The notes under the pieces: model-generated | What the model was told of the DNA's origin: nothing | What the model saw: only the letters and a program-made list of their open reading frames with translations | Database searches by the model: none | Shown here: positions 1 to 39,300 of the stretch, one piece after another | Layout: each line of letters opens with the position of its first letter | Position numbering within the stretch: the first letter of the stretch is position 1 | Assembly: GCA_965285935.1 (NCBI GenBank) | Contig: OZ260664.1 | Coordinates: 95,170,001 to 95,234,000 of the forward strand | Direction: 5' to 3' | Length of the DNA: 64,000 bases | From: Ophelia neglecta | Lineage: Eukaryota | Translations under genes and position numbers: made by a program

Positions 1-2
1 GT

Positions 3-13738: not shown

Positions 13739-14334
13739 GTTTGTCCTTTCATAGATTAATGCTTACTTTTATACGGTATTTACTGACTTTTCACTGAAAA
13801 AATTCAATACAAAAATATGTGATTATATCTTTTCCGAAATAATCTTTTTTTGTAAAATAAACTTTTTTCTAAAATGTTAAACGCTGCGTGAGGTCTCCCA
13901 ATTCAAGACTTAAAACCATAAGAATCAACAGTCAATGCCATTTTTATTTTATAATTGAACCACCCCTTCTCTTCCTTAAATGTTGTCACTCTGGCAACAA
14001 TATTTTTATATTATCAAATGGCGCTTAGAAATACAAATACGAACATATCTGCTAGTGGACAATGTCTGCTGGTTTTTCCCTGCTTAGACTTTGTTTCTAG
14101 CTGAAGGAATTAACTTACCAGCTTAACTCAGATGGCAATTTACAAGGCGGCGATACAACCTCAAATCAAGTCGCTGTAAAAGGTACTTTTTTCGCAGATT
14201 TTTAAGAAAGTAAATTGATTCCTGGGGGACATCACAATACCAGCGAATATTGATATCAGTCAAAAATGATCAGGAAGGTGCACCATAGGATCAAGGACTT
14301 TAATCTGTCGGCCCATTTCATTATTTTCAAACAT

Positions 14335-19648: not shown

Positions 19649-20397
19649 ACTGGTCGTTGATTGGAAATCACATATCTGATGCCACTATGGCCCTCTACTT
19701 AGGCCTCATGTGCGTAAAGGATGAGCTTGGTGTTTTCTCTAACGAGGAATACGTGCGTCGTTGGTGTATGGTACTCAGCTCTCTTCAGCTAGCGTCACTC
19801 TGTGGGTGGTCTGCCATGTGTATACTAATGTCTTACGCTTTTTATAAAAGTCTCCGTCTTTTAAAATTGGAACAACAGATGGGTTCTCTTAATAGTGTTG
19901 GGTTTGTATTGATCACATGGCTGTTTGTGTATGGTCCTGTACTTTTTCCCAGTTTGATAGCGCAAATATTCTCTGATGAAGTTCTGACTGCATCCGAAAA
20001 CTGTTCTGCCATTTTCCCTACCTCTTCTCCCGGTATAATACACATTGTGTTCCTGATAATTTGTTTACTGTTAAGTTTGATTGCACTGGGAGTGACAGCC
20101 GGGTTCTTTGGTATGGCGTTAGCTATGGCAGCTAGGTCGGCAAGAAACGTGCAGAAGCACGGGGACAAAAGGAGCGCGAATTCATCCTCAACCCGTGTTG
20201 TCATAAGACACTTTGCCTTTACCACTATGATCCCGCTTTGTGGGTGTCTAGTTCTATCTGTTTGTCTACTGACCATCTTAACAATTGGATACTTAAGTCC
20301 AATTACCGGACAGATGCTCTCCCTCTATGTGTTCCCATTACCAGGATTGATTAACCCGCTCTTCTTCCTGGTCCGAAGGTCCCTATTGTTGTTGTAA
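17039..20397 (+). pseudogene. Receptor copy 2, exon 2b: same stop/frameshift at ~19346, 7TM intact in the shifted frame
   Basis: Duplicated acceptor AG at 17037-17038; ORFs 17063-19348 and 19345-20397. Confidence 0.8.
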
Positions 20398-23300
20398 CAA
20401 AGGAAAGAACAGTAATTTGTGCATTAACAGCAATTGTTTCTTAAAGAACACACTAACTGTATTTGGGCCTATCTCTTATCAAGCACAGTATGCAATCACG
20501 CACTAATCCTTCCATTAATTCTGGCACCAAAATTGGAACAGTAAGTAAGTAATTCCTTTATTTGGCGTCAATAATACATATTGAAAGAAATATAAACTCT
20601 AAACCAGCTGGTAAATCCAATATATAATACATATGATGCAACATATTGTCATTATTTATGAATCATACAGTTAGACAGGTATAATACAATGCGAAAAAAT
20701 GAGTTTTTCATGCATGAGTATGTGCTTAGTACCACAATAGAAGGCATTATAAACAAGAAAAACAAAGAGTCATACATGGTTGCAGTATGTCTTGGGAAAC
20801 CTGTTACATCCATGATAATAAGCATATTCTCCATCTATTGACCGTTGGCGCAAACATTAAATTATCTACAGCAGGTAAAAATACCCTCGGTAGTTTTTCA
20901 ACTGTACGGTAAGCTCTAATGAGTGGTTATATCAAACCAGCCTTACTATGTAATCGGTGGGTAGAACTAAAAGTATTCATGATGAATAGAAGGTTGCTCC
21001 GCCTGGCGACTAAGGTCACAGTTACGACTAAAGACTCGTGTCTTCAGGCTCGCTTTTAATTGCTGATTGGCCGGAAATGAATGTTTACCATTACTTTCTT
21101 TAGTTCTGTTTTTAAAATCGGCATTTTTGGTAATTAAGATTTTTTAGCGCCATTTGAGCTCAATTGTTATTATTACTTTTACCACGTATGTGTCCAAATT
21201 AGTCTAAACAAATTGGGTGTTCGTAATTGGAATAGGCAGTAATATGGAAATAATATTAAGTTTCGATGACGTTAATGTAACACTATTGAACTATAGTACC
21301 AAATGCATTATGTATTTCCTAAAATAAGCTTAGATTATATATTTAGCTGAACATAGTATATGCATTTATTCATATGAATTATGATATTTTGATAGCGTGG
21401 TTTAAGTCAAAAATAAGGTGCATTGAAAAGTCAACCATATAAGTATTGGTTTTGATATTGTGGTCTGCCATGAGTATCATAATGCCTTACGCCTTTTACA
21501 AAAGTCGTAGTGTTTTAATTTGGCACAACAGGTTGGTACTCTAAATAGTGTTGACTTGGTGTTAATAGTATGGCTGTTTGTGCATGTCCTGTACTTGTTC
21601 CCAGACTGATATAGCTGACATTGCCTGATGAGGTTTTAACTGCGTCGTTTCTGCCATTTTCCCGACCTCTTTTCTAAGTATAATACAAATTTAATAACTG
21701 TTGGCGTCCTTTCTTTTTACCTCAGTGTTCTCATCCCTTTTGACCCGAATAATCTCATATTATTCTCTCAGCCACCTTTTGTAATCCTATATGTGTCAGT
21801 AGATTGTAAACATGATCCAAATTCTAAATAAAATATATATAGTAACTATTTGTAAAGTATCAAAATAGACAGGAATGGGCTTGGTCGTTTTGCTTTTCAA
21901 TCCTAACACGTTACGCTGATGGTTTAATGAGACACCATAAACTATTATTATATTTAATGCTATTTCTCCAGGAAGAATTGTGGTAGTACCATTCAAGGTC
22001 GTAAGCTCTACCTAGCTTAGGCTAAATGTTTATACTAGCAGCTTTTCGATTGACCTCCTCTTCTTTTGTAAACAGTAGGCATATTGTCCCCAGTTCCAAT
22101 ATTATTTACTGCATTGTTTATTGTCTTTATATTTATATGCATTTAATTTAACTCACGAGATGAATGTACCCCTGTTGATGAAACATAATGATATAATGAT
22201 CAATTCGAGATGTTTACTAATAATTCTATGATGGAACTGCATAAATGTATAAAGCATGCATTATGTCACACTCATTCCATATGTCACATGCATACGTTAA
22301 CCGCTGTTTTATTAATGAAGTATTGTTCTGCATTATATATCGTAAATATAACGTTTATAGAGTATAAAGTATAAAAAAGTGGTAGCAGTTGAAAGGCAGT
22401 AAATACCCTGCATGCTCGGTAGAATGGTTAATAAAGAATAGTTCATACCGCTGTTGAAGAGCGTACACACCTACCGGTCATTATGATTTCATTCAGTTGT
22501 ACTTCAGAAAGTTAAACTCTTGAATACACAAAGTATTTGAATAGTCCACTTCCTACATGCATGTGCGTTCTTGCTTATGAGGTCGTTGGGGCAATATAAT
22601 GACCCTCACATCGCGTAACTTCTTTTAAATTCACAGTTCATATACGAGTTAAAATTCCTTATTAATGTTTTTATGCGGCCAGTGTATGCGGCGGGATTTA
22701 TCATTGTATATCGACATTATTTGCAGTGCGAATTACCATGGGGATGCCCCAGTTATACGATGGAACGACGCACATCATAATTACAATTCACCCGTCAGAC
22801 AGTTGTGTGAGGGTAATTATATTGCCCAAACGATCTCATTGGCAAGAAGACACAGGCATATATGAAGTGGACTATTTTAATACTTTGTGTATTCACACGA
22901 GTTGAACAGCATGTGACTTTATCTAGAAATCATTTGAAAGATCAATGGTCTATAATAACTCTAAAACGCGATATCTACCGGATATTTTTCCGTTTAATAA
23001 AAGTTGCTTATTCACAATAAATCAAAGTTTGTTTTGTATTGTTTATGAAAAAACTTGATCACATTTAACCTATATAAATTATCACTAGTCATAAGTTCAC
23101 GATAATACTGCCTCCCATTACAATTGATACAATCTTTATCAGATATTTGAATTTATATCTTGGCAAGCTTATTCTTTAATACGGAACTGTTGTTAGATTT
23201 TGGAAGCGGCCTGACCATTCGGGATAGGCTGGGCCCATTACTAATAGCTGAGACCCGTATTGATCGGGTTTCTGGTCTGACACCCGTGATGATCGGGGTT

Positions 23301-25016
23301 TCTAGGACTTACCCATTGACTAGGGCTAGGCTTAATGCCAAAATGGCAAGTTTAAGACCAAATACAGCTTCCATAAACCCACTTTTTAGGTTAAGGCTGA
23401 TTAAGCACCTTTATCCTGATCTTAGTCGTCCGAGACCACTTCCAGAAGCTGAGCCCTTAAAAAGTCAAATCTAATCCAACACAAAACAAGACAATATGTC
23501 AGCGCATAAGTGAATTAAACTCATTAGATTTCAATCTAACTGGCGTTGGCTTTAATGGTATCAGGGAGATTAAGTTTTGAATTAAATTCACCCTGTATTA
23601 GTTTTAACTGTAGACTCTTATAAGGTCCGGTTTCATTTTACTTTTGTTGCTGAAATAAATCTTAGTTTACCATTTTACGATTGGAAACTTTCATCTCTGT
23701 TTTCCTAATAGAAATCATGTTTGAATTAATAGGATTTTAACTTTGATGACTCTTCACAAGTCATCGGATAGGAAACATTTGTTAAATGTATATTTATGAT
23801 TATGCCCCTATACTTTAGATGGAAAGTCATGCCGATTTGGAATAAAGTTAAGACATTTGAATGGGCCAGGATTATTAGTAAACAGGTACTGCTTCTAGCT
23901 CACAGTTTAATCTGATGAAATGCTTGGTTTGCTCGTTGTGCCAGTGACAAACCTTACGTCGGGTGACTGGGCATTTTTGGTATGTGTCCCACGTCTGTGG
24001 AACGAACTCCCTTTTTACATCAGGAGGGCAGCCTCACTTGGTGCTTTTATTTTATATCATCTTATCAGAGACTTACATTTTTAAAAGATTGGACTGTTGT
24101 TTCTCTTATATGTACAGCGCTCGTGAACATGTAGCTTTTATATAAGACAAGCACTATATCAAATGTCAATAAATAAATAAATGAAAAGAGAATAATCCCT
24201 GGTTTTTACGATAATTTACGGGTTTAACCCATTCAAAGTGTAACTTTCAAAACAAATTCAATTTCATTTTTTATCAAAAATGTTGAATATGGATATATAA
24301 ATTTTCTAAAATAAGAAAAATCAGCTAGGCCGGGTATATGGAAGCAGACCGAAATCCTAACTAGCATTAGAATAAGGATAAAGGTGCTTAGTCGGCCTGA
24401 ACTTGTTAACCCGGATTTCTGGTAGTTTGATTTGGTCTTAAACCTTTCCATTTTGATTTTAACTTAACCCTGGTTAACGGAAACAAAGATTGAAGCGGTC
24501 TTAGCATAGTGATAATAGGCTATTTTAATCCCTAAACTTAAGACCTCTTCCAGAAACTGGGCCTTGGGGACTAACATTCATGTTGATACACCTCCGAACA
24601 GACACCATATGTTGATAAGGTATACATTACCGGCGGGAGTAATCTAATACGAAGGCAACTCATTGGGTCCATGCATATTTGAATTCTTGGCATTTGATTT
24701 AATTTTACAGAAAAATGTGAGCTTTAATTACATTGGTCTTTGAAACTAAACAAGATGAATCTCTCGGCGTCCTGTTACACTTAGTCTAAAAATTGGCATT
24801 GTAATTTTATAAAGTCGCACTTTCTGTTATCTGAAGTGATTGGATCTAAACGGCTTGAAATTATATCCACATTTCACCAGCAATGAGGAATAATCAAATT
24901 TCCAATTTCTAATAAAATAGTATTTTATTACACTTCAGATGAAAACTTGCCACCCTTATATAAATTCTCTCGGAGCTAGGGCCTACCCGGTACGGATTTC
25001 TTGCAACACAGCCATA

Positions 25017-27704
25017 ATGGACAAAAAAGCAATTATTCCTTTTCTTGTTCAACTTGTATTTCTTTTTAATGCAATCTCGGCCTCGAAGTGGCAGAATTAC
25101 ATAACTAAGATCACGGTTTCCTCGCTTGACATGGAACAACCGAAGAACCTGGTTGAAACCAAGAAACAAGCCTTGTCCTATCTGCAATTGAACGCGGCAC
25201 ACTGTTTGTTGGCAAGAGGGCGCAATACGCCACACGTGACAAAGTCACCTTGTGGAGTCATTCGCGTCACTTCGGAAGTCGATAATAACTCGACAGAGTG
25301 GATGGTTGCTGTCGAGGGGCCATTCCACATAAACGTCACCTTCCTGGAGTTCCGCCTGCCTCACAGTTTTGAATTATGTAGAGTCGAAAGTGTGTTACTT
25401 CAATGGTCATTGGCTACAACTAATCCTCCGACGGAAATCCGGATTTGTGGTCATAAGGAATCTTGGACTGAATATGTATTTTCTAATACCATAAGACTAG
25501 CTCACGTAAGTTCTCTCATACCAACATCTGGAACATTTGTACTAATTTACAATGCGTACCAGCCAGGATCAATCGACAAGACAGTCCATAGCCAACATGT
25601 AGCCTTTCGGGAAGGTAGAAACTCTGCAATAGTTTATTACTTTCAAGTAGAAACGTTGACACGGTTTAACTTTCGAAGGGTTCTGACAATTCATATCTGG
25701 GCAGACCCAGATCATCGTGTCGCTTTACAGCTTAATACAGGACGTGTTGAATGTTTCCAGGCGTACGACGGCCCCACGTCTCGTTCTAAGTCTCTTAGAC
25801 TAGGATGGCAGAGGGGAGGCATTCGATACGTCTCAGCAATGTCAAGCTGGTTTATCATGATGCTTAGGATACTTAAATACGACCTTACTACATCGTGCAA
25901 TGTAACAGATGAACTGAGCGCAAAATTTAAGTTAGTGTTTTCGACGACGGAGTCCACTCAACTACAAGTTACAGATTTCCATGTCCTCAACATACATCTT
26001 CCCTCAGTTCATTGTTACGGCCACTCCGTGATGGTGTGCAAACTTGAGTTCAGCGCTACGAACAAACTAATGCATTTAAATGTATCTATTAACCAGTTTG
26101 TGACGGAAAAGCCCACAGATTGCTGGAAGAGAGGTATGATGATTTATGAAACTGACCGGAAAAGGGACCAGGTTATAGATGAGCACACACGACTATTGAG
26201 TATGCCTGTCTTTACTTTATGCAATAACTACATAACGTGGGAGGGCGGTACCTCCGAAGGACCCATCATAGACAACATGGTTAGTTCTAGACATTCATAC
26301 ACCGTATTGCTATATTCCTATACAGAGAATTTGTCCAGAACCTGGGGCATTGGCGTGAAGCTCAGCGTGGCAACCACTCCTTGTGGAGGACTCTATCTGG
26401 ACTGCCACAAAAGAGATATTGTTAAAGACCATTTGAAATCATACCACATTTCATCATACGGTCAGGTTCCTAGGTTTAAAAAGATTGACGCCGATATGCG
26501 GTATATGAACTTTTACACGTATCGACCACGTTGGTCTGCCTCCATCTATATTTTCATTGACGGCGGGACACTATCAATTGTAAGTGGTGTCACAAACACT
26601 TTCAATTTTGTGGGAGTGCGAACAAGCGACAAAGCTGGAAATTCCTGTGTTGTGTTGCATCATATACAGACAGAAGTTCCCTTGCTGATGCCAAATAAAA
26701 GGTGTTATTTGTCAGTGGTTCAAATTCGAGACACAGGACTTGATAATAATTTCGACATACAGTTAAGACGAAAAACAGAGAGGTCACTAAATTGCTCACC
26801 GTCTCGAACTTTCGAATCCTGGGTTCTGAGTACATTTAAAGCCAATTCGCTGTCTGCAAATGCCTTATTATGGCAGGACCTTTTGCCTTTCTGTCAGAGT
26901 TTGTCCCTTTACGTAAAAGCCAACCCCATTCCAGCAAAGCTTTTTCCTGATCAAAATATAACCAGTAAGTTCATGAGGAGAATGGAAGACATTTCAAACC
27001 TGGCTGATTCAAAGTCCTCCCTTCAGCATACAGTTCTTGTTCAGGGCACAAATCGGACGATGGCGGTGATCGCTCACTATGACGATGGTAATGGAATGGT
27101 GACCAGTAGGAGCTGCGGGTACAGGAAGCAGTCACCTATAACGGACACACGATTCAGGTTTTTTTCTGCCACATGCCCCCGTGTATGTTTATCAATTGAC
27201 ATCTTTTATGAATTAGTAGAGAAGAAAATGTATAAAAAGTATCACCCAACGGCATACCATAGGCAAACATGGAATGTGACCCTTACCAGTGACCGAGAAT
27301 TTTCTTTGGTTGAGAGTGTTACCTTCTGTGATAGGTACATTATTATAAGACCTGATACCTCCCAATGTCCACCAATAGACTGCAAGATCAAATTTGACAT
27401 TGACCCATATCATGCCTTTAATGCAATGAATCAAGAAATCATATTTGTCCGACAAATAAAAAACTTCGTCCAAACGCAAACTGCGTATTTTGTGATCTGG
27501 GAGGAAGCGAAGATTTCTGGGAAACAGGCTGAAGATAGATGTAAGCGGAGCGGAGGTCATCTGCCCGTTATTCATACAGAGAAAGATGCGATGGTAATCG
27601 GGGACCTGATCTGGGGACGTTACGCTCCCGTCTCGCTATATGCAGCACCCTGTAGGACTTATTCTGTCGTCTGTGCTCATTTCATTGGCTTGAACCCAAT
27701 AACG
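25017..27704 (+). CDS. Receptor copy 3, exon 1 (896 codons)
   Basis: gccataATGG start, signal-peptide-like N-terminus, open frame to the ACG|GTTTGT donor. Confidence 0.88.
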
Positions 27705-28336
27705 GTTTGTCCTTTCATAGATTTATGTTTACTTTTATACAGTATTTACTAACTTTTCACTGAAAAATTTCAATACAAAAATATGTGATTATATCTTTTC
27801 TCAAAATAATTTTTTTTAAATAAACTTTTTTCTAAAATGTTAAACGCTGCGTAGGTCTCCCAATTCAAGACTTAAAACCATTAAAACCAGGAGTCAATTT
27901 CAAGCTTAATTTTAAAATGGAACCACCCCTTCTCTTCATTAAATGTTGTCCCTGTGGCAACAGTATTTTTATATTACCAAATGGCGCTTAGAAATGCAAA
28001 TACGAACATATCTGCTAGAGGACAATATCTGCTGGTATTTCACTGCTTAGTCTTTGTTTCTAGCTAAAGCAATTAACTTACCGGCTTAACTCAGATGGCA
28101 ATTTACAAGACGGCGATACAACCTCAAATTAAGTCGCTGTAAAAGGTACTTTTTTTCGCAGATTTTTAAGAAAATTTTATTCCTGGGGGACATCACAACA
28201 CCAGCGAATATTGATATCAGTCTTAAATGATAAGGAAGGTGCATCCTAGGATCAAAACTTTAATCTGTCCGCCCATTATTTTCAAACCTACTTAGGTGAT
28301 GTTGTTATAACAATTAGGTTTTACGTTTACTCGTAG

Positions 28337-31300
28337 GGACGTTGGGTTGATGGAAGCCCCGCGGGATTCACCAAATGGACCAGTTCCCGCCACACCCTGC
28401 AAATGACGTCAGTATACTCTGCTATACCCGGGACAGATTCGTCAACATCCACGTATCACAAAGACTGGTCAGACCTTCTATACAACCGATCTCATCGTGT
28501 CTTCCCAAACTCGGAGGATGAATGCACAATGGCATTGTGGAATAAAGTTACCCTCGAATTTGAATGGGTCAGTATTAATTGTAACCAGAAAATATTGCAA
28601 TATAATTTAATTTGTGAAAAGAAACACCCGACCGGTAAACACTCAAAAAATGGGTTTCGGACAATTATGGCTGTTTACCTCTATAATATATTAGATGCAT
28701 TTAAGTGGTATGAAAAAACCTCAGCAATTGGACCGACCGTCAGCGCATGGGCTATACTTGATTGTCAATCCTGGAAAATTAAGTTCATCTTTGGGGAGAC
28801 ACATCTATTTTTACCTGCCTCTGTTTCTTCATATATTAGTTTAAATGCAAAACTTTTAATGAGTGGACATTGTTCTATTTGGAAAAAGACTATCATTTCT
28901 TCAATGGGAGGCAACAAACCGGGCGGGAACGATAAACCGTTGGTAGGGGGGATGTACATAACCGTTCTCTATCTGTCGCTTCCTCGCGAGATAATTCCAC
29001 CACAAGATTATGGTGACCCCGTTGATTTGTCCACAATGGTCAGTACAGGAATTGGCCAGTGCGCTTTTTATTGGGTTTATCATAACAACTCCTGTATCAG
29101 ACTTCATGACATAACCGGAAGGTATATTGACAGTATTAAAACTGTTAATATGTGTCAAAATAATGTCGCTGTTCACTCACTAGCAATTTTATACTCACGC
29201 ATTATTAATTTTAATATCTGTAACATCTATCAAATATTAATAACAAACATTACTGCTCGTGTTAAATCACAGCTTCCATCTCTATTTATGGTATCATTTA
29301 CGCCACCTTCAAATCTCTCCACACCACACCTGCACGAGCTGTTTGTCTGTAAAGACGGACACTATATCCCAGACCTGCACTATCTGGACGGTACTCCAGA
29401 CTGCCCAGACGGTAGTGACGAGGTGGCCTTTATAAATGCATGTGACATTCAGGGAAACGCAACATTCCAGTGTGGACACTGTCTGATTGGAACATGTGTG
29501 TGCATGGAACATTACTACCAGTGTGAAACAGGGGGATGTGTAAAATGGGCGAAAGTATGTGATGGCGTGTTTAACTGTAACACTGGTGATGACGAACGGC
29601 ATTGCAGTTCGACTTTTATTCTAGAATTAGATCAAACGACAAACTTGTCCAGACATTTTGTCTGCAAACAAAGCGGACATGAAATACCCATTGACCTTTT
29701 GGACGATTTGGTGGCTGATTGTGAAGATTCGGAAGACGAAGCACTCGTCTCCTCATTCAACAGATACGAAACTCGAGATGCGATCACTATGAAATGTATT
29801 AAAACTGGAGGCTTGCCGTGTCTGCACGGACATCCTCGTTGCTACGCCGCTCATTTCATTTGCGTTTATGACCACAATTCGTTTGGACACCTCCGACATT
29901 GTCGGAAAGGTGCCCACCTTGCCGCCTGTGGCTTGGTCCAATGTCCGGCCATGTTCAAGTGCCCTGGCACTTACTGTGTGCCTGTTAGAAAGCTATGTGA
30001 CGGAATAACGGACTGCCCCGGAGCTGATGACGAACGGAGCTGTCCTACAGCGGCTCTGTGTCCGGGCTTCTTTAGATGCAAAAACAATAAATGTGTATCT
30101 CTACAGGAAATATGCGATGGAAAATCAGATTGTTCCCCTGACGATGATGACGAGTTTCTGTGTAATACTGTACAGTGTTCCGAGTTGTGTTCGTGTCTTG
30201 GTCGGTCCATTGTTTGCCATCGTAATATTTCGTATATAAACATTGGTGGATACATGTCACTGAGCGTGCGCAATAATTTTGGCAGGCTACCAATCATTGA
30301 CGACTACAGTGATCTCATTTCACTCACATTGATGGTTGATTTAAGCGGTAAATTGTCTAATATTTCTAGTATGCCGACACTCTCTTTTCTAGACCTGGGC
30401 AACAACCGTATTACTGAATTGATTGGACAACCATTCAGTTCGTTGCGCAACTTGAGGAAATTATTATTAAGAGGAAATTACATCGAGAGCATCAAATCTG
30501 ACAATTTCTTTGGTTTGAACGAGTTGCGGCTGCTCGATATCTCGAATGCTTATCTGCTACATCTAGATTCTGATTGCTTTACACATATGCATAAATTGGA
30601 AATTGTTGACCTTTCTTCTAATAAATTGGAGGAAATAGACCCATTATTTCTGCAGAATCTTCCGCCGGGTGTGATATTGAATATCAATGAAAATCGCATG
30701 ACTAAATTTCCAAAGAGGTCAGAGTTGATCCAGTCATCCATCCTGTTCATTTCTAATTCAAAATGGGTTTGTTGTTTAATTGGCATAGGTAAATGTCTTT
30801 GGTCTGGTGAGGAACTTGTTTGTGGACAGATATTATCATCTATAGAAATAGGTGCCATTCGTATCATGTCTGGATTGATGCTTATAATATTTTGTGTGTG
30901 TGTTATCCTTCGTGAATCAAAAAGGACTCGTCATATTCTATCCCATTGGTCGTTGATTGGAAATCACATATCTGATGCCACTATGGCCATCTACTTAGGC
31001 CTTATGTATGTAAAGGATGAGCCTGGTGTTTTCTCTAACGAGGAATACGTGCGTCGTTGGTGTATGGTACTCAGCTCTCTTCAGCTAGCGTCACTCTGTG
31101 GGTGGTCTGCCATGTGTATACTAATGTCTTACGCTTTTTATAAAAGTCTCAGTCTTTTAAAATTGGAACAACAGATGGGTTCTCTAAATAGTGTTGGGTT
31201 TGTATTGATCACATGGCTGTTTGTGTATGGTCCTGTACTTGTTCCCAGTTTGATAGCGCAAATATTCTCTGATGAAGTTCTGACTGCATCCGAAAACTGT

Positions 31301-31693
31301 TCTGCCATTTTCCCTACCTCTTCTCCCGGTATAATACACATTGTGTTCCTGATAATTTGTTTACTGTTAAGTTTGATTGCACTGGGAGTGACAGCCGGGT
31401 TCTTTGGTATGGCGTTAGCTATGGCAGCTAGGTCGGCAAGAAACGTGCAGAAACACGGGGACAAAAAGAGCGCGAATTCATCCTCAACCCGTGTTGTCAT
31501 AAGACACTTTGCCTTTACCACTATGATCCCGCTTTGTGGGTGTCTAGTTCTATCTGTTTGTCTACTGACCATCTTAACAATGGGATACTTAAGTCCATTT
31601 ACCGGACAGTTGCTCTCCCTCTATGTGTTCCCATTACCAGGATTGATTAACCCGCTCTTCTTCCTGGTCCGAAGGTCCCTATTGTTGTTGTAA
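28337..31693 (+). CDS. Receptor copy 3, exon 2 (1118 aa + stop); the spliced product is ~2,014 aa, the only complete intact copy visible
   Basis: Acceptor TCGTAG|GGACGT; uninterrupted CTL-LDLa-LRR-7TM frame. Confidence 0.9.
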   Translation, partial: GRWVDGSPAGFTKWTSSRHTLQMTSVYSAIPGTDSSTSTYHKDWSDLLYNRSHRVFPNSEDECTMALWNKVTLEFEWVSINCNQKILQYNLICEKKHPTGKHSKNGFRTIMAVYLYNILDAFKWYEKTSAIGPTVSAWAILDCQSWKIKFIFGETHLFLPASVSSYISLNAKLLMSGHCSIWKKTIISSMGGNKPGGNDKPLVGGMYITVLYLSLPREIIPPQDYGDPVDLSTMVSTGIGQCAFYWVYHNNSCIRLHDITGRYIDSIKTVNMCQNNVAVHSLAILYSRIINFNICNIYQILITNITARVKSQLPSLFMVSFTPPSNLSTPHLHELFVCKDGHYIPDLHYLDGTPDCPDGSDEVAFINACDIQGNATFQCGHCLIGTCVCMEHYYQCETGGCVKWAKVCDGVFNCNTGDDERHCSSTFILELDQTTNLSRHFVCKQSGHEIPIDLLDDLVADCEDSEDEALVSSFNRYETRDAITMKCIKTGGLPCLHGHPRCYAAHFICVYDHNSFGHLRHCRKGAHLAACGLVQCPAMFKCPGTYCVPVRKLCDGITDCPGADDERSCPTAALCPGFFRCKNNKCVSLQEICDGKSDCSPDDDDEFLCNTVQCSELCSCLGRSIVCHRNISYINIGGYMSLSVRNNFGRLPIIDDYSDLISLTLMVDLSGKLSNISSMPTLSFLDLGNNRITELIGQPFSSLRNLRKLLLRGNYIESIKSDNFFGLNELRLLDISNAYLLHLDSDCFTHMHKLEIVDLSSNKLEEIDPLFLQNLPPGVILNINENRMTKFPKRSELIQSSILFISNSKWVCCLIGIGKCLWSGEELVCGQILSSIEIGAIRIMSGLMLIIFCVCVILRESKRTRHILSHWSLIGNHISDATMAIYLGLMYVKDEPGVFSNEEYVRRWCMVLSSLQLASLCGWSAMCILMSYAFYKSLSLLKLEQQMGSLNSVGFVLITWLFVYGPVLVPSLIAQIFSDEVLTASENCSAIFPTSSPGIIHIVFLIICLLLSLIALGVTAGFFGMALAMAARSARNVQKHGDKKSANSSSTRVVIRHFAFTTMIPLCGCLVLSVCLLTILTMGYLSPFTGQLLSLYVFPLPGLINPLFFLVRRSLLLL

Positions 31694-34600
31694 CAAAGGA
31701 AAGAACAGTAATTTGTGCATAAACAGCAATTGTTTCTTAAAGAACACACTAACTGTATTTGGGCCTATCTCTTATCAAGCACAGTATGCAATCACGCACT
31801 AATCCTTCCATTATTTCTGGCACCTAAATTGGAACAGTAAGTAAGTAATTCATTTATTTGGCGTCAATAGTACATATTGAAAAAAATATAAACTCTTAAC
31901 CAGCTGGTAAATCCAATATATAATACATATGATGCAACATATGGTCATTATTTATGAATCATACAGTTGGACAGGTATAATACAATGCGGAAAAAATGAG
32001 TTTTTCATGCATGAGTATGTGCTTGATACCACAATAGAAGGCATTATAAACAAGAAAAACAAAGAGTCATACATGGTTGCAGTTTGTCTTGGGAAACCTG
32101 TTACATCCATGATAATAAGCATATTCTCCATCTATTGACCGTTGGCGCAAACATTAAATTATCTACAGCAGGTAAAAATACCCTCAGTAGTTTTTTAACT
32201 GTAGGGTAAGCTCTAATGAGTGGTTATATCAAACCAGCCTTACTATGTAATCGGTGGGTAGAACTAAAAGTATTCATGATGAATAGAAGGTTGCTCCGCC
32301 TGGCGACTAAGGTCACAGTTACGACTAAAGACTCGTGTCTTCAGGCTCGCTTTTAATTGCTGATTGGCCGGAAATGAATGTTTACCATTACTTTCTTTAG
32401 TTCTGTTTTTAAAATCGGCATTTTTTGGTATTTTTTTTTCGATTGATATTGAGGTTTTATATACACTGCTTAAGTGTTTAGCGCCATTTGAGCTCAATTG
32501 TTATTATTACTTTTACCACGTATGTGTACAGATTAGTCTAAACAAATTGGGTGTTCGTAAATGGAATAGGCAGTAATATGGAAATAATATTAAGTTTCGA
32601 TGACGTTAATGTAACACTATTGAACTATAGTACCAAATGCATTATGTATTTCCTAAAATAAGCTTAGATTATATATTTAGCTGAACATAGTATATGCATT
32701 TATTCATATGAATTATAATATTTTGGTAGCGTGGTTTAAGTCAAAAATAAGGTGCATTAAGAAGTCAACCATATAAGTATTGGTTTTGATATTGTGGTCT
32801 GCCATGAGTATCATAATGCCTTACGCCTTTTACAAAAGTCGTAGTGTTTTTAATTTGGCACAACAGGTTGGTACTCTGAGTAGTGTTGGCTTGGTGTTGA
32901 TAGTGTGGCTGTTTGTGTATCGTACTTTACTTGTCCCCAGACTGATATAGCAGACATTGCCTGATGAGGTTTTAACTGCGTCGTTTCTGCCATTTTCCCG
33001 ACCTCTTTTCTAAGTATAATACAAATTTCATAACTGTTGGCGTCCTTTCTTACCTCAGTGTTCTCATCCCTTTTGACCCGAATAATCTGATATTATTCTC
33101 TCAGCCACCTTTTGTAATCCTATATGTATCAGTAGATTGTAAACATGATCAAAATTCTAAAGAAAATATATATAGTAACTATTTGTAAAGTATCAAAGTA
33201 GACAGGAATGGGCTTGGTCGTTTTGCTTAACAATCCTAACACGTTACGCTGATGGTTTAATGAGACACCATAAACTCTTATTATATTTAATGCTATTTCT
33301 TCAGGGAAAGTTGTGGTGGTACCATTCAAGGTCGTAAGCTCTACCTAGCTTAGGCTTAATGTTTATACTAGCGGCTTTTCAATTGACCACCTCTTCTTTT
33401 GTAAACAGTAGGCATATTGTCCCCAGTTCAATTATCATTTACTGCATAGTTTATCGTATTTATATTTATATTCATTATTTAAATTAACTCACGAGATGAT
33501 GAATGTTACCCTATTGAATAAACATAATGATATAATGATCAATTCGATATGTTTACTAATAATTCTATGATGGAACTGCATAAATATATAAATCATGCAT
33601 TATTTCACACTCATTCCATATGTCACATGCATACGTTAACCGTTTTATTAATGAAGTATTGTTCTGCATTATATATCGTAAATATAACGTTTATAGAGTA
33701 TAAAGTATAAAAAAGTGGTATCAGTTGAAAGGCAGTAAATACCCTGCAGACTCGGTAGAATGGTTAATAAAGAATAGTTCATACCGCTGTTGAAGAGCGT
33801 ACACACCTACCGGTCATTATGATTTCATTCAGTTGTACTTCAGAAAGTTAAACTCTTTTGAATACACAAAGTATTTGAATAGTCCACTTCCTACATGCAT
33901 GTGCGTTCTTGCTTATGAGGTCGTTGGGGCAATATAATTACCCTCACATCGCGTAACTTCTTTTATATTCACAGTTCATATACGAGTTAAAATTCCTTAT
34001 TAATGTTTTTATGCGGCCAGTGTATGCGGCGGGATTTATCATTGTATATCGACATTATTTGCAGTGCGTATTACCATGGGGATGCCCCAGTTATACGATG
34101 GAACGACGCACATCATAATTACAATTCACCCGTCAGACAGTTGTGTGAGGGTAATTATATTGCCCAAACGATCTCATTGGCAAGAAGACACAGGCATATA
34201 TGAAGTGGACTATTTTAATACTTTGTGTATTCACACGAGTTGAACAGCATGTGACTTTATCTAGAAATCATTTGAAAGATCAATGGTCTATAATAACTCT
34301 AAAACGCGATATCTACCGGATATTTTTCCGTTTAATAAAAGTTGCTTATTCACAATAAATCAAAGTTTGTTTTGTATTGTTTATGAAAAAACTTGATCAC
34401 ATTTAACCTATATAAATTATCACTAGTCATAAGTTCACGATAATACTGCCTCCCATTACAATTGATACAATCTTTATCAGATATTTGAATTTATATCTTG
34501 GCAAGCTTATTCTTTAATACGGAACTGTTGTTAGATTTTGGAAGCGGCCTGACCATTCGGGATAGGCTGGGCCCATTACTAATAGCTGAGACCCGTATTG

Positions 34601-36325
34601 ATCGGGTTTCTGGTCTGACACCCGTGATGATCGGGGTTTCTAGGACTTACCCATTGACTAGGGCTAGGCTTAATGCCAAAATGGCAAGTTTAATACCAAA
34701 TACAGCTTCAATAAACCCACTTTTTAGGTTAAGACTGATTAAGCACCTTTATCCTGATTTTCGTCGTCCGAGACCACTTCCAGAAGCTGAGCCCTTAAAA
34801 AGTCAAATCTAATCCAACACAAAACAAGATAATATGTCAGCGCATAAGTGAATTAAACTCATTAGATTTCAATCTAACTGGCGTTGGCTTTACTGGTATC
34901 AGGGAGATTAAGTTTTGAATTAAATTCACCCTGTATTAGTTTTAACTGTAGACTCTTATAAGGTCCGGTTTCATTTTACTTTTGTTGCTGAAATAAATCT
35001 TAGTTTACCATTTTACGATTGGAAACTTTCATCTCTGTTTTCCTAATATAAATCATGTTTGAATTAATAGGATTTTAACTTTGATGACTCTTCACAAGTC
35101 ATCGGATAGGAAACATTTGTTAAATGTATATTTATGATTGTGTCCCTATACTTTAGATGAAAAGTCATGCCGATTTGACATAAAGTTAAGACATTTGAAT
35201 GGGCCAGGATTAATAGTAAACAGGTACTGCTTCTAGCTCACAGTTTAATCTGATGAAATGCTTGGTTTGCTCGTTGTGCCAGTGACAAACCTTACGTCGG
35301 GTGACTGGGCATTTTTGGTATGTGTCCCACGTCTGTGGAACGAACTCCCTTTTTACATCAGGAGGGCAGCCTCACTTGGTGCTTTTATTTTATATCATCT
35401 TATCAGAGACTTACATTTTTAAAAGATTGGACTGTTGTTTCTCTTATATGTACAGCGCTCGTGAACATGTAGCTTTTATATAAGACAAGCACTATATCAA
35501 ATGTCAATAAATAAATAAATGAAAAGAGAATAATCCCTGGTTTTTACGATAATTTACGGGTTTAACCCATTCAAAGTGTAACTTTCAAAACAAATTCAAT
35601 TTCATTTTTTATCAAAAATGTTGAATATGGATATATAAATTTTCTAAAATATAGAAAAATCAGCTAGGCCGGGTATATGGAAGCAGACCGAAATCCTAAC
35701 TAGCATTAGAATAAGGATAAAGGTGCTTAGTCGGCCTGAACTTGTTAACCCGGATTTCTGGTAGTTTGATTTGGTCTTAAACCTTTCCATTTTGATTTTA
35801 ACTTAACCCTGGTTAACGGAAACAAAGATTGAAGCGGTCTTAGCATAGTGATAATAGGCTATTTTAATCCCTAAACTTAAGACCTCTTCCAGAAACTGGG
35901 CCTTGGGGACTAACATTCATGTTGATACACCTCCGAACAGACACCATATGTTGATAAGGTATACATTACCGGCGGGAGTAATCTAATACGAAGGCAACTC
36001 ATTGGGTCCATGCATATTTGAATTCTTGGCATTTGATTTAATTTAACAGAAAAATGTGAGCTTTAATTACATTGGTCTTTGAAACTAAACAAGATGAATC
36101 TCTCGGCGTCCTGTTACACTTAGTCGCACTTTCTGTTATCTGAAGTGATTGGATCTAAACGGCTTGAAATTATATCCACATTTCACCAGCAATGAGGAAT
36201 AATCAAATTTCCAATTTCTAATAAAATAGTATTTTATTACACTTCAGATGAAAACTTGTCACCCTTATATAAATTCTCTCGGAGCTAGGGCCTATCCGGT
36301 AAGGATTTCTTGCAACACAGCCATA

Positions 36326-39300
36326 ATGGACAAAAAAGCAATTATTCCTTTTCTTGTTCAACTTGTATTTCTTTTTAATGCAATCTCGGCCTCGAAGTGG
36401 CAGAATTACATAACTAAGATCACGGTTTCCTCGCTTGACATGGAACAACCGAAGAACCTGGTTGAAACCAAGAAACAAGCCTTGTCCTATCTGCAATTGA
36501 ACGCGGCACACTGTTTGTTGGCAAGAGGGCGCAATACGCCACACGTGACAAAGTCACCTTGTGGAGTCATTCGCGTCACTTCGGAAGTCGATAATAACTC
36601 GACAGAGTGGATGGTTGCTGTCGAGGGGCCATTCCACATAAACGTCACCTTCCTGGAGTTCCGCCTGCCTCACAGTTTTGAATTATGTAGAGTCGAAAGT
36701 GTGTTACTTCAATGGTCATTGGCTACAACTAATCCTCCGACGGAAATCCGGATTTGTGGTCATAAGGAATCTTGGACTGAATATGTATTTTCTAATACCA
36801 TAAGACTAGCTCACGTAAGTTCTCTCATACCAACATCTGGAACATTTGTACTAATTTACAATGCGTACCAGCCAGGATCAATCGACAGGACAGTCCATAG
36901 CCAACATGTAGCCTTTCGGGAAGGTAGAAACTCTGCAATAGTTTATTACTTTCAAGTAGAAACGTTGACACGGTTTAACTTTCGAAGGGTTCTGACAATT
37001 CATATCTGGGCAGACCCAGATCATCGTGTCGCTTTACAGCTTAATACAGGACGTGTTGAATGTTTCCAGGCGTACGACGGCCCCACGTCTCGTTCTAAGT
37101 CTCTCAGACTAGGATGGCAGAGGGGAGGCATTCGATACGTCTCAGCAATGTCAAGCTGGTTTATCATGATGCTTAGGATACTTAAATACGACCTTACTAC
37201 ATCGTGCAATGTAACAGATGAACTGAGCGCAAAATTTAAGTTAGTGTTTTCGACGACGGAGTCCACTCAACTACAAGTTACAGATTTCCATGTCCTCAAC
37301 ATACATCTTCCCTCAGTTCATTGTTACGGCCACTCCGTGATGGTGTGCAAACTTGAGTTCAGCGCTACGAACAAACTAATGCATTTAAATGTATCTATTA
37401 ACCAGTTTGTGACGGAAAAGCCCACAGATTGCTGGAAGAGAGGTATGATGATTTATGAAACTGACCGGAAAAGGGACCAGGTTATAGATGAGCACACACG
37501 ACTATTGAGTATGCCTGTCTTTACTTTATGCAATAACTACATAACGTGGGAGGGCGGTACCTCCGAAGGACCCATCATAGACAACATGGTTAGTTCTAGA
37601 CATTCATACACCGTATTGCTATATTCCTATACAGAGAATTTGTCCAGAACCTGGGGCATTGGCGTGAAGCTCAGCGTGGCAACCACTCCTTGTGGAGGAC
37701 TCTATCTGGACTGCCACAAAAGAGATATTGTTAAAGACCATTTGAAATCATACCACATTTCATCATACGGTCAGGTTCCTAGGTTTAAAAAGATTGACGC
37801 CGATATGCGGTATATGAACTTTTACACGTATCGACCACGTTGGTCTGCCTCCATCTATATTTTCATTGACGGCGGGACACTATCAATTGTAAGTGGTGTC
37901 ACAAACACTTTCAATTTTGTGGGAGTGCGAACAAGCGACAAAGCTGGAAATTCCTGTGTTGTGTTGCATCATATACAGACAGAAGTTCCCTTGCTGATGC
38001 CAAATAAAAGGTGTTATTTGTCAGTGGTTCAAATACGAGACACAGGACTTGATAATAATTTCGACATACAGTTAAGACGAAAAACGGAGAGGTCACTAAA
38101 TTGCTCACCGTCTCGAACTTTCGAATCCTGGGTTCTGAGTACATTTAAAGCCAATTCGCTGTCTGCAAATGCCTTATTATGGCGGGACCTTTTGCCTTTC
38201 TGTCAGAGTTTGTCCCTTTACGTAAAAGCCAACCCCATTCCAGCAAAGCTTTTTCCTGATCAACATATAACCAGTAAGTTCATGAGGAGAATGGAAGACA
38301 TTTCAAACCTGGCCGATTCAAAGTCCTCCCTTCAGCATACAGTTCTTGTTCAGGGCACAAATCGGACGATGGCGGTGATCGCTCACTATGACAATGGTAA
38401 TGGAATGGTGACCAGTAGGAGCTGCGGGTACAGGAAGCAGTCACCTATAACGGACACACGATTCAGGTTTTTTTCTGCCACATGCCCCCGTGTATGTTTA
38501 TCAATTGACATCTTTTATGAATTAGTAGAGAAGAAAATGTATAAAAAGTATCACCCAACGGCATACCATAGGCAAACATGGAATGTGACCCTTACCAGTG
38601 ACCGAGAATTTTCTTTGGTTGAGAGTGTTACCTTCTGTGATAGGTACATTATTATAAGACCTGATATCTCCCAATGTCCACCAATAGACTGCAAGATCAA
38701 ATTTGACATTGACCCATATCATGCCTTTAATGCAATGAATCAAGAAATCATATTTGTCCGACAAATAAAAAACTTCGTCCAAACGCAAACTGCGTATTTT
38801 GTGATCTGGGAGGAAGCGAAGATTTCTGGGAAACAGGCTGAAGATAGATGTAAGCGGAGCGGAGGTCATCTGCCCGTTATTCATACAGAGAAAGATGCGA
38901 TGGTAATCGGGGACCTGATCTGGGGACGTTACGCTCCCGTCTCGCTATATGCAGCACCCTGTAGGACTTATTCTGTCGTCTGTGCTCATTTCATTGGCTT
39001 GAACCCAATAACGGTTTGTCCTTTCATAGATTTATGTTTACTTTTATACAGTATTTACTAACTTTTCACTGAAAAATTTCAATACAAAAATATGTGATTA
39101 TATCTTTTCTCAAAATAATTTTTTTTTAAATAAACTTTTTTCTAAAATGTTAAACGCTGCGTAGGTCTCCCAATTCAAGACTTAAAACCATTAAAACCAG
39201 GAGTCAATTTCAAGCTTAATTTTAAAATGGAACCACCCCTTCTCTTCATTAAATGTTGTCCCTGTGGCAACAGTATTTTTATATTACCAAATGGCGCTTA

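What the first reader, a model, noticed from the sequence alone, without database searches (positions are those of the whole stretch)
25017..31693. Giant CUB + C-type lectin + LDLa + LRR + 7TM receptor hidden as two 'separate' ORFs
Seen: the ~930-aa and ~1,100-aa ORFs join through one phase-0 intron that rebuilds a CTL domain (FIGLNPIT|GRWVDGSP.GFTKW...C...WVSINC...LICE), giving ~2,014 aa. Known: LDLa+LRR+7TM defines GRL101/relaxin-type LGRs. Inference: an extension of ~1,200 aa with one clear CUB, about two divergent CUB-like modules, an unassigned ~350-aa region and a CTL makes this a multi-module recognition GPCR. It may serve pattern recognition, chemosensation or gamete/self recognition. 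I cannot establish from the sequence alone that the architecture is undescribed.
Basis: partly seen in the sequence, partly recalled or inferred. Interest (0 to 1): 0.85.

Follow-up and report, generated by a model that had tools for sequence, protein, structure and literature searches.

The report
Giant CUB-lectin GRL101-type receptor gene
The two long ORFs are the two exons of one intact 2,014-residue invertebrate receptor gene of the orphan GRL101/relaxin-receptor type. It is one of at least about 100 fast-evolving copies in this genome, so it is a real gene but a variant of a receptor design already recorded in worms and snails.

Summary
ORF 25017-27704 and ORF 28337-31693 (+) join through a GT-AG, phase-0 intron (27705-28336) to give 2,014 codons. 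The splice sites are identical in four tandem copies in the window. The same intron position recurs in 14-15 paralogs of 22-50% identity and in a contig from another organism. The exon-1 tail and exon-2 head map to adjacent halves of one C-type lectin-like domain. No RNA test was possible.

Architecture: signal peptide, three CUB folds, two unassigned beta-sandwiches, a lectin-like domain lacking sugar-binding motifs, about 230 unassigned residues, 4-5 LDLa, LRR, 7TM. The 7TM is related to RXFP1 (profile E 7.5e-8). It lacks E/DRY and CWxP, reads NPLFF instead of NPxxY, and has almost no C-tail.

This is copy C of four tandem copies of 94-99% identity; B and D are broken. The genome holds about 104 near-full-length family 7TM regions.

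The domain order is not undescribed. CUB+lectin+LDLa+LRR+7TM proteins are catalogued in annelids and a ribbon worm, and a tandem cluster of lectin-LDL-LRR GRL101-like genes was linked to parasite resistance in a snail. An earlier follow-up in this scan reached a similar verdict on another paralog.

Verdict: a new variant of a known orphan kind, of moderate interest.

The parts
25017..27704 (+). Exon 1 (coding part 1, 896 codons): signal peptide plus ectodomain modules up to the first half of the CTLD
   Evidence: ORF; Met 25017 has context GCCATAATGG; paralogs align from here; ungapped in all 4 copies
25017..25082 (+). Signal-peptide-like hydrophobic N-terminus (residues 1-22)
   Evidence: The only hydrophobic window in exon 1; helix 3-21 in the AF2 model; similar N-termini in paralogs
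25248..25571 (+). CUB domain 1 (residues 78-185)
   Evidence: Pfam CUB E 1.2e-3, 19.6 bits, just under the cut-off; family profile vs cubilin E 1.1e-20; VIA Z 10.2-10.3, rmsd 2.6-2.8, 96-97 aligned to C1s CUB1
25584..25946 (+). CUB-like domain 2 (about residues 190-310), carrying a YDGP motif
   Evidence: Two-CUB alignments: PCPE-1 CUB1-CUB2 to 77-310 (Z 10.5) and C1r/C1s/MASP to 79-309. Conserved D251 G252 P253. Not supported by sequence profile alone
25950..26384 (+). CUB domain 3 (residues 312-456, with an insertion)
   Evidence: VIA Z 10.7, rmsd 2.7, 111 aligned to neuropilin-1 a1; TSG-6 CUB Z 10.2; spermadhesins. hhalign D1 vs D3 probability 66%
26541..26948 (+). Beta-sandwich domain D4 (residues 509-644), family unassigned
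   Evidence: AF2 strands with pLDDT about 60-85. No specific structural or profile match
26964..27416 (+). Beta-sandwich domain D5 (residues 650-800), family unassigned
   Evidence: Only generic jelly-roll/sandwich matches: TPP II Z 9.3, GOLD Z about 8, SIDT1 Z 8.2. The language-model search gave nothing usable
27459..27704 (+). N-terminal half of the C-type lectin-like domain (residues 815-896), ending FIGLNPIT
   Evidence: Family profile vs the CTLDs of DEC-205, PLA2R and mannose receptor, E 1.6e-14 to 1e-5. Aligns to P0007 residues 735-790
27705..28336 (+). Intron, 632 nt, GT-AG, phase 0
   Evidence: Sequence. Indels and lower identity than the exons among copies. Splice sites conserved in 4 copies, 14-15 paralogs and another organism
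28337..31693 (+). Exon 2 (1118 codons plus TAA stop)
   Evidence: ORF; intact also in copy A
28337..28621 (+). C-terminal half of the CTLD (residues 1-95): GRWVDGSP...C...W.S.NC...LICE; no EPN/QPD and no WND
   Evidence: BLASTP to P0007 797-878, E 1e-4. hhalign probability 95.7%, E 9.8e-9. The CEL-I alignment shows GEPNN replaced
28622..29326 (+). Unassigned region (residues 96-330) with conserved cysteines; possibly a degenerate second CTLD-like module
   Evidence: AF2 pLDDT mostly under 50. Conserved Cys columns C242 and C253. No Pfam or Atlas match
29327..30172 (+). LDLa array (4 Pfam-detected modules, about 5 by cysteine pattern) with a conserved Cys-rich linker
   Evidence: Pfam Ldl_recept_a E 3.3e-21, 4 stretches. 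Foldseek to megalin/LRP2. Aligned with P0007 LDLa modules
30173..30811 (+). Leucine-rich repeat domain with N- and C-terminal Cys caps
   Evidence: Pfam LRR_8 E 5.1e-15. AF2 pLDDT 75-89. Foldseek to LGR4, TSHR and FSHR. Invariant C812, C813, C820, C829
30812..31690 (+). Seven-helix membrane domain, a divergent RXFP/LGR type: no E/DRY, no CWxP, NPLFF, and about 9 residues after TM7
   Evidence: Seven helices 835-1117 in AF2. Hydropathy. Paralog-only profile hits RXFP1 7tmw_R at E 7.5e-8 over TM1-TM7. Continuous alignment with the P0007 7tm_1 region. No Pfam 7tm_1 hit
32153..32158 (+). Candidate polyadenylation signal ATTAAA, about 460 nt after the stop
   Evidence: Present at the same offset behind all four copies. 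A motif only; not shown to be used

Best explanation
Positions 25017-27704 and 28337-31693 (+) are the two coding exons of one intact gene for a 2,014-residue receptor. Its layout is: signal peptide, CUB, CUB-like, CUB, two unassigned beta-sandwich domains, a C-type lectin-like domain split by the only intron, about 230 unassigned residues, 4-5 LDLa modules, a capped LRR domain, and a seven-helix membrane domain with almost no cytoplasmic tail. It belongs to the GRL101/relaxin-receptor (type C LGR) lineage. Within that lineage it sits in a separate, fast-evolving, tandemly amplified family specific to this spiralian (probably annelid) lineage. The genome holds about 104 near-full-length family 7TM regions, roughly three quarters of them in unbroken exon-2 frames of at least 1,000 codons. 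The window holds four copies: A and C intact, B and D broken.

How it most likely works (inferred, not shown): the long CUB/sandwich/CTLD stalk and the LDLa array capture extracellular protein or glycoprotein ligands. The membrane-proximal LDLa-LRR unit relays binding to the 7TM, as in RXFP1, where the LDLa module is essential for activation. Because E/DRY, CWxP and the NPxxY tyrosine are lost and there is no C-tail, classical G-protein/arrestin coupling is doubtful. The 7TM may act mainly as an anchor or co-receptor platform. The family size, tandem turnover and broken copies fit a diversified recognition repertoire (immune or chemosensory) better than a single-hormone receptor.
For: Gene model: GT-AG phase-0 intron. 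Exons ungapped but intron gapped among copies. dN/dS 0.2-0.5 between copies. Same intron position in 14-15 paralogs of 22-50% identity and in another organism. The same two-ORF order on an ENA contig and on an NCBI assembly contig.

Domains: family profile hits cubilin CUB at E 1e-20 and CTLDs at E 1e-14. AF2 exon-1 model has pLDDT 72, with CUB matches at Z 10.2-10.7. The CTLD halves are contiguous on P0007. LDLa and LRR by Pfam. The exon-2 model matches LGR4, TSHR, FSHR and C. elegans LGR at E 1e-15 to 1e-12 over 500-630 columns. The paralog-only 7TM profile hits RXFP1 alone, at E 7.5e-8.

Family: 132 genome matches to the family 7TM profile, about 104 near full length. The family forms one 99%-supported clade with long branches, outside all named GRL101-like proteins. 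Canonical GRL101-like loci exist separately at 41-62% identity to a snail GRL101, against 21-25% for family members.

Analogy for a recognition role: a tandem cluster of 12 CTL-LDL-LRR GRL101-like genes, with truncated copies and haplotype variation, lies in a schistosome-resistance locus of Biomphalaria sudanica (PMC12297450). The RXFP1 LDLa module is essential for activation (abstract of PMC4837482).
Against: Two of the four neighbouring copies are broken, so recent copies here do decay, and copy C could be unexpressed. No domain shows clear positive selection: per-domain dN/dS is mostly 0.2-0.6 on small counts, and the one value above 1 rests on 1 synonymous change. Pfam 7tm_1 does not recognise the 7TM of any of the 13 genome members tested. 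The exon-2 model is of low confidence (pLDDT 56; the first 330 residues under 50). Ligand, signalling route and tissue are unknown. The recognition-repertoire idea rests on analogy and family dynamics only.
Confidence: 0.72

Rival explanations
1. Copy C is a young, non-functional duplicate (an unexpressed or decaying pseudogene) whose frame simply has not been hit yet.
For: Neighbour D (99.2-99.6% identical) carries a 1-bp deletion and a TTG-to-TAA stop. Neighbour B carries a 2-bp insertion and a 2.66-kb internal duplication. About a quarter of family exon-2 regions genome-wide are interrupted. There are no RNA data.
Against: 6,045 nt of uninterrupted frame with intact splice sites. Copy A is also intact. 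dN/dS between copies is 0.2-0.5 and no indels occur in exon 1 of any copy, while the 632-nt intron has indels. A conserved ATTAAA follows all copies.
Confidence: 0.15
2. The two ORFs are two separate genes: a secreted CUB protein, and a separate LDLa-LRR-7TM receptor.
For: Public gene callers report them as separate proteins (P0024 and P0002-P0005). No transcript evidence was obtained here.
Against: Those calls are prokaryote-style ORF calls on eukaryotic contigs. ORF 1 would end, and ORF 2 begin, in the middle of one CTLD. ORF 2 has no signal peptide. GT/AG, phase and position are conserved in every paralog examined and in another organism. The two ORFs are always adjacent on the same strand.
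Confidence: 0.04
3. It is a conventional peptide-hormone receptor: the functional orthologue of GRL101 for an insulin/IGF/relaxin-like ligand, coupling to G proteins.
For: It has the LDLa+LRR+7TM core of type C LGRs. RXFP1 is the only solved structure hit by the 7TM profile. GRL101 has been proposed as an IGF-type receptor (PMC8286064).
Against: The genome has separate, much more conserved GRL101-like loci. This family has about 100 members on very long branches. E/DRY, CWxP and the NPxxY tyrosine are lost and there is no C-tail. A 1,200-residue CUB/CTLD extension is present.
Confidence: 0.08

Closest known systems
GRL101 of Lymnaea stagnalis and 'GRL101-like' type C LGRs of molluscs, echinoderms and arthropods (orphan)
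   Same: LDLa array followed by a capped LRR domain and a rhodopsin-class 7TM. The LDLa-LRR-7TM block aligns as one unit with GRL101-like proteins.
   Different: Canonical forms are about 1,000-1,300 aa, usually one or a few genes, with a Pfam-recognisable 7tm_1. Here there is a 1,200-residue CUB/sandwich/CTLD extension, fewer LDLa modules (12 in Lymnaea per PMC8286064), an eroded 7TM, and about 100 family members. The family lies outside the named GRL101-like clade in the tree.
Biomphalaria sudanica SudRes2 cluster of GRL101-like CTL-LDL-LRR GPCR genes (PMC12297450)
   Same: A C-type lectin-like domain N-terminal to LDLa, LRR and 7TM. Dense tandem cluster, truncated copies, and under-annotation by gene callers. 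Proposed immune recognition role.
   Different: It is a mollusc cluster of 12 genes with no CUB or beta-sandwich modules reported. Orthology to this family was not tested. The link to resistance there is a GWAS association, not a shown mechanism.
Annelid and nemertean catalogued proteins: Paralvinella palmiformis LSH36_179g02007 (P0007), Lamellibrachia satsuma LSAT2_016795 (P0093), Lineus longissimus LOC135489423 (P0104)
   Same: The same domain types in the same order: CUB ... Lectin_C ... LDLa ... LRR ... 7tm_1. The CTLD and the LDLa-to-7TM block align with the window gene.
   Different: Only 24% identity over LDLa-7TM, and no detectable similarity over the first 800 residues (BLASTP E 0.49). 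They keep D-R-F/Y and NPxxY and are recognised by Pfam 7tm_1. They carry other extras (somatomedin B, EGF, F5/8C, MAM). All are uncharacterised.
RXFP1 (relaxin receptor 1; PDB 7TMW)
   Same: The only solved structure hit by the family's 7TM profile, with TM1-TM7 aligned and the TM3 and ECL2 cysteines conserved. It has LDLa plus LRR plus 7TM.
   Different: RXFP1 has one LDLa module, couples to Gs and keeps the activation motifs and a C-tail. The window gene has lost these.
LGR4-6 (R-spondin receptors)
   Same: The exon-2 model's best structural matches across LRR+7TM. From my own knowledge, they are a precedent for LGRs that act as binding or co-receptor platforms rather than through G proteins.
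   Different: Type B LGRs have no LDLa, CUB or CTLD and many more LRRs. The resemblance is structural only.

Membership tests
Type C LGR / GRL101-like receptors | One or more LDLa modules N-terminal to the LRR domain | tested here: met
   Pfam Ldl_recept_a E 3.3e-21, 4 stretches, directly upstream of the LRRs; aligned with P0007 LDLa modules
Type C LGR / GRL101-like receptors | Capped LRR ectodomain directly preceding the 7TM | tested here: met
   Pfam LRR_8 E 5.1e-15; AF2 pLDDT 75-89; Foldseek to LGR4, TSHR and FSHR E about 1e-15 over LRR+7TM
Type C LGR / GRL101-like receptors | Rhodopsin-class 7TM homologous to RXFP/LGR 7TMs | tested here: met
   Paralog-only profile hits RXFP1 at E 7.5e-8 over TM1-TM7. 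Seven helices in AF2. Caveat: Pfam 7tm_1 gives no hit for this gene or any of 13 genome members
Type C LGR / GRL101-like receptors | Class A activation motifs (E/DRY at the TM3 end, CWxP in TM6, NPxxY in TM7) | tested here: not met
   The TM3 end reads SYAFYK and no E/DRY is seen in the 12 paralogs aligned. CW of CWxP aligns to FT. TM7 reads NPLFF
Type C LGR / GRL101-like receptors | Ligand-dependent G-protein signalling | not testable with these tools
   Needs expression and second-messenger assays
CUB domain | Sequence match to the CUB profile and a CUB beta-sandwich fold | tested here: met
   The single sequence is just under the Pfam cut-off (19.6 vs 21.4 bits). The family profile hits cubilin at E 1.1e-20, and 21 of 36 members hit Pfam CUB. 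Structure Z 10.2-10.7 for residues 78-185 and 312-456. Domain 2 (190-310) rests on structure only
C-type lectin-like domain (fold) | WIGL-type and W.DGS motifs and the conserved cysteines, with a match to CTLD profiles | tested here: met
   Exon-1 tail profile vs DEC-205, PLA2R and MRC CTLDs, E 1.6e-14. Exon-2 head vs the P0007 CTLD, probability 95.7%. Invariant C63, C82, C93 and W77. Tested as halves only; the joined domain was not built
Ca2+-dependent carbohydrate-binding C-type lectins | EPN or QPD motif and WND motif of the primary Ca2+/sugar site | tested here: not met
   Where CEL-I has GEPNN the gene has TSSRH. The WND position reads WVSINC. A long loop insertion is present
CTL-LDL-LRR GRL101-like tandem clusters (Biomphalaria SudRes2 type) | CTL, LDLa, LRR and 7TM in that order, in dense tandem arrays with truncated members | tested here: met
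   Domain order. Four-copy array with two broken members. Published description in PMC12297450. Orthology not tested

The most novel reading that the evidence does not exclude
The roughly 100-member family is a diversified non-self or chemical recognition repertoire of a spiralian (probably annelid), built on an LGR scaffold. Variable CUB, sandwich and CTLD heads would bind many different ligands. A 7TM stripped of the classical activation motifs and C-tail would signal by a non-G-protein route, or serve as an anchor or co-receptor. That would make it an invertebrate immune or chemosensory receptor class of a kind not yet demonstrated functionally.
Probability: 0.25. Interest if true: 0.65.

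Novelty: new variant of a known kind. Interest (0 to 1): 0.45.

Why it matters
GRL101-type receptors have been orphans since 1994. Versions with a lectin domain have only recently been tied, by association, to parasite resistance in snails. This genome shows the same design pushed much further: 2,000-residue, two-exon genes with three CUBs and a lectin-like domain, amplified to about 100 loci, and with the G-protein activation motifs lost family-wide. If the genes are expressed, the family is a tractable candidate for a large recognition-receptor repertoire in spiralians. It also offers a natural test of what an LGR 7TM does without its activation motifs. On the practical side, the public relatives I looked up for the N-terminal exon were all unnamed, prokaryote-style ORF calls, so the exon may go unannotated in gene sets.

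Tried and rejected

2. Joined protein. The CTLD was tested as two halves.

3. Internal repeats by sequence. hhalign between the six exon-1 segments gave only a weak D1-D3 link (probability 66%). D2, D4 and D5 are not CUB-like by sequence.

4. Identity of D4, D5 and exon-2 residues 96-330. The PDB profile search, VIA wide search, Atlas shape search and language-model searches gave only generic beta-sandwich matches or nothing. I do not claim new folds.

5. Positive selection. Per-domain dN/dS between copies showed no convincing signal; counts were small.

6. Species identity. Mitochondrial COX1 carries 8 in-frame TGA codons, which I read as an invertebrate mitochondrial code, so it could only be searched in short pieces and I did not pursue it. 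An intronless HSP70 gave only 76-80% identity to bivalves and to the annelid Owenia. The animal is therefore a spiralian whose proteome is not in the database. 'Annelid' comes from an earlier scan note and from the best named receptor relatives, and is not proven here.

7. Named full-length orthologues of the exon-1 module. The exhaustive representative search gave 62 hits of at most 33% identity among those longer than 200 aa. All 17 that I looked up are unnamed ENA ORF calls.

8. A literature search for an annelid GRL101 expansion found nothing specific.

Full report
WHAT IS THERE. The + strand carries two very long ORFs, 24939-27752 and 28403-31693. Between them lie a canonical donor (ACG|GTTTGT at 27704/27705) and an acceptor preceded by a pyrimidine-rich stretch (TCGTAG|GG at 28336/28337). 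The 632-nt intron is phase 0. The first ATG of ORF 1 (24939) has a poor context. The Met at 25017 has GCCATAATGG, is followed by the only hydrophobic segment of exon 1, and is where all paralogs begin to align. ATTAAA lies about 460 nt after the stop behind every copy.

IS THE SPLICE REAL? I could not get RNA data.

The comparative evidence is strong.
- The window holds four tandem copies of the locus with a period of about 11.3 kb and 94-99% identity. Exon 1 is ungapped in all of them. The intron has 1-17 gapped positions and lower identity (89.6% in copy B, against 94.3% and 96.6% for its exons). The splice sites are identical.
- The genome holds many diverged paralogs. In all 16 loci fetched, an ORF of about 900-990 codons is followed on the same strand by an ORF of about 1,100-1,170 codons.
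- In 14-15 of those loci, at 22-50% identity, the junction lies at the same place and phase...F(I/L)G(L/S)xxxx|GT(A/G)AGT ... polypyrimidine-CAG|xRWxxG.
- A contig from another organism (ENA ERZ25069296) has the same junction, LGLNTSQ|GTCAGT ... TTGTAG|NRWSDGRP.
- A contig of NCBI assembly GCA_029979725.1 has the same two-ORF order.
- Public ORF calls P0002-P0005 begin close to the exon-2 start motif (xTWIDGSP).
- The exon-1 tail and the exon-2 head map to adjacent parts of a single domain in the annotated annelid protein P0007. Residues 835-893 align to P0007 735-790, ending IFIGLH. Exon-2 residues 1-99 align to 796-882, beginning YQWTDGS (hhalign probability 95.7%, E 9.8e-9). That region is called Lectin_C by Pfam.
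A two-gene reading would cut a disulfide-bonded domain in half and leave the receptor half without a signal peptide.

DOMAINS. On the single sequence, Pfam sees only a borderline CUB in exon 1, and 4 LDLa plus LRRs in exon 2.

A 36-sequence family alignment (A1) gives a profile that hits cubilin CUB at E 1.1e-20. It also hits the CTLDs of DEC-205, PLA2R and mannose receptor at E 1.6e-14.

The AlphaFold model of exon 1 (pLDDT 72, pTM 0.69) is a string of beta-sandwiches.
- Residues 78-185 are a CUB (Z 10.2-10.3, rmsd 2.6-2.8, 96-97 aligned to C1s CUB1).
- Residues 312-456 are a CUB with an insertion (Z 10.7, rmsd 2.7, 111 aligned to neuropilin-1 a1; also TSG-6 and spermadhesins).
- About 190-310 aligns as the second CUB of two-CUB structures (PCPE-1, C1r/C1s, MASP) and carries a YDGP motif.
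- Two further sandwiches (509-644 and 650-800) match only generic folds such as TPP II, GOLD and SIDT1, at Z 7-9. These values lie within or near the range the tool's own note treats as common arrangements. I leave both unassigned and make no claim of new folds.

The CTLD lacks the EPN/QPD and WND motifs and has a long loop insertion. It is lectin-like, not evidently a sugar binder.

Exon-2 residues 96-330 are unassigned, with low model confidence and conserved cysteines.

The exon-2 model (pLDDT 56) has a confident LRR arc and seven helices. Its best structural matches are LGR4, TSHR, FSHR, LHCGR and a C. elegans LGR over 500-630 columns (E 1e-15 to 1e-12), followed by megalin/LRP2 for the LDLa part.

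THE 7TM. Pfam 7tm_1 finds nothing in this gene or in any of 13 genome paralogs. A profile built only from this genome's paralogs (A3) nevertheless hits one solved structure, RXFP1, at E 7.5e-8 over TM1-TM7. The TM3 and ECL2 cysteines are conserved. The region also aligns continuously with the 7tm_1 domain of P0007. The activation motifs are gone. The TM3 end reads SYAFYK; no E/DRY appears in the 12 paralogs aligned, whereas P0001 has DRY and P0007 has DRF. CWxP is not conserved. TM7 reads NPLFF; some paralogs keep NPxxY. Only about 9 residues follow TM7. Membership of the LGR type C lineage is therefore supported, but classical G-protein signalling is not.

The finding is copy C of four.
- Copy A (exon 1 starts 571 bp before the window; exon 2 at 2829-6185) is intact.
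- Copy B has a 2-bp insertion before the 7TM and a 2.66-kb internal tandem duplication with one mismatch.
- Copy D, 99.2-99.6% identical to C, has a 1-bp deletion in an A-run and a two-base TTG-to-TAA stop.
- dN/dS between copies is 0.2-0.5 overall and mostly 0.2-0.6 per domain, with no convincing positive selection.

Genome-wide, the family-specific 7TM profile finds 132 matches. About 104 are near full length, and about 75 of those lie in unbroken frames of at least 1,000 codons. They sit in clusters on at least seven contigs. The exon-1 search gives at least 45 loci as a lower bound.

In a tree of the LRR-7TM region, the 12 family members sampled form one clade (SH-aLRT 99) with very long branches. 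The clade lies outside all named GRL101-like proteins, including the annelid CUB-lectin ones. The root is arbitrary and a long-branch warning applies.

The genome also carries separate, far more conserved GRL101-like loci, at 41-62% identity to a snail GRL101 against 21-25% for family members. This family is therefore a derived expansion and not the hormone-receptor orthologue.

The organism is an invertebrate: its mitochondrial COX1 frame contains TGA codons, which I read as Trp. It is a spiralian whose proteins are not in the database, since HSP70 is at most 80% identical to bivalves and Owenia. An earlier scan note calls it an annelid, which I could not confirm.

COMPARISON WITH WHAT IS KNOWN. 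The core is that of GRL101 and type C LGRs, which are still orphan (PMC8286064, PMC6267866). The extended architecture is already catalogued as uncharacterised proteins. Paralvinella P0007 and Lamellibrachia P0093 have CUB, Lectin_C, LDLa, LRR and 7tm_1. Lineus P0104 adds F5/8C and MAM. Cnidarian and scorpion forms have CUB/MAM/F5/8C.

The closest published analogue is the SudRes2 locus of Biomphalaria sudanica. It holds twelve tandem GRL101-like genes with CTL, LDL, LRR and GPCR domains. It is under-annotated, has truncated copies and haplotype structural variation, and is associated by GWAS with schistosome resistance (PMC12297450).

What is different here:
- three CUB folds plus two unassigned sandwiches;
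- a head of about 800 residues with no detectable named relative. The exhaustive search gave 62 hits, none above 33% identity among those longer than 200 aa, and all 17 looked up are unnamed ENA ORF calls;
- absence of E/DRY in all 12 paralogs aligned, with CWxP and NPxxY also eroded;
- the strict two-giant-exon structure;
- the size of the expansion.

An earlier follow-up in this scan (s1-734101) judged another paralog of this genome to be a member of a known orphan kind. My own tests agree on the kind, and add the family size, the motif loss and the tandem decay.

MECHANISM (inferred). The multi-module ectodomain binds extracellular ligands. From my own knowledge, CUB and LDLa modules typically bind partners through Ca2+-coordinated acidic sites. 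The LDLa-LRR unit next to the membrane may relay binding to the 7TM, as in RXFP1, where the LDLa module is essential for activation (abstract of PMC4837482). With the activation motifs and C-tail missing, the output is more likely non-canonical, or the 7TM is an anchor or co-receptor platform. The family dynamics fit a recognition repertoire. None of this is shown.

VERDICT. The architecture is not undescribed and the function is open. I rate it a new variant of a known, orphan kind, with interest 0.45.

The BEL/Pao retroelement in the window was only observed.

Noticed in passing
window 1-6998, 10040-21135, 24001-32500, 35339-43807: Four tandem copies (A-D) of the whole locus, with a period of about 11.3 kb and 94-99% identity. 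A and C are intact. D has a 1-bp deletion (40085) and a TAA stop (41017-41019). B has a 2-bp insertion (16690 and 19347).
   Followed up: yes
window 14382-16992 versus 17039-19649: Copy B contains a 2.66-kb internal tandem duplication. It runs from 47 bp upstream of the acceptor to mid-7TM, with a single mismatch in 2,611 nt. It is either a very recent event or an assembly artefact.
   Followed up: partly
window 32753-33004 (also about 7287-7522, 21460-21691, 44101-44334): A degenerate fragment of about 250 bp from the TM3-TM5 coding region (54% aa identity, with stops) lies about 1.06 kb downstream of each copy. It looks like a relic of an older partial duplication carried along in the repeat unit.
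   Followed up: partly
window 55369-57965 (- strand): Inverted, fragmentary, degenerate remains of a further copy, with pieces at 77-93% identity, including the first 114 codons of exon 1 at 56969-57307.
   Followed up: partly
window 47492-52385 (+), and 59829-60332 (-): A BEL/Pao-type LTR retroelement with an aspartic protease, reverse transcriptase, Peptidase_A17, integrase and DUF5641, spread over three ORFs, in a stretch of strong GC skew. A separate reverse-transcriptase fragment lies on the other strand. Observed only.
   Followed up: partly
G000:C7:94.81-94.91 Mb (loci L005-L012, L015, L016): A second cluster of at least 10 family genes lies about 260-380 kb upstream of the window, at 47-52% protein identity to copy C, in both orientations. 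Several carry stops.
   Followed up: partly
G000:C1:26.51-26.70 Mb, C1:143-144 Mb, C34: Many family loci give identical scores in series (for example nine at C1:26.5-26.7 Mb and four on C34). This suggests very recent segmental duplication or duplicated assembly.
   Followed up: no
G000:C7:83285984-83287306, C5:68608776-68610101, C12:37429127-37430926: Separate loci are much closer to canonical GRL101 (41-62% identity to a Haliotis GRL101-like LRR-7TM region). These are presumably the conserved orthologue(s).
   Followed up: partly
window 24931-24941: The first ATG of ORF 1 (24939) is directly preceded by TTCAG. This could be the acceptor of a 5'-UTR intron. It is untested.
   Followed up: no
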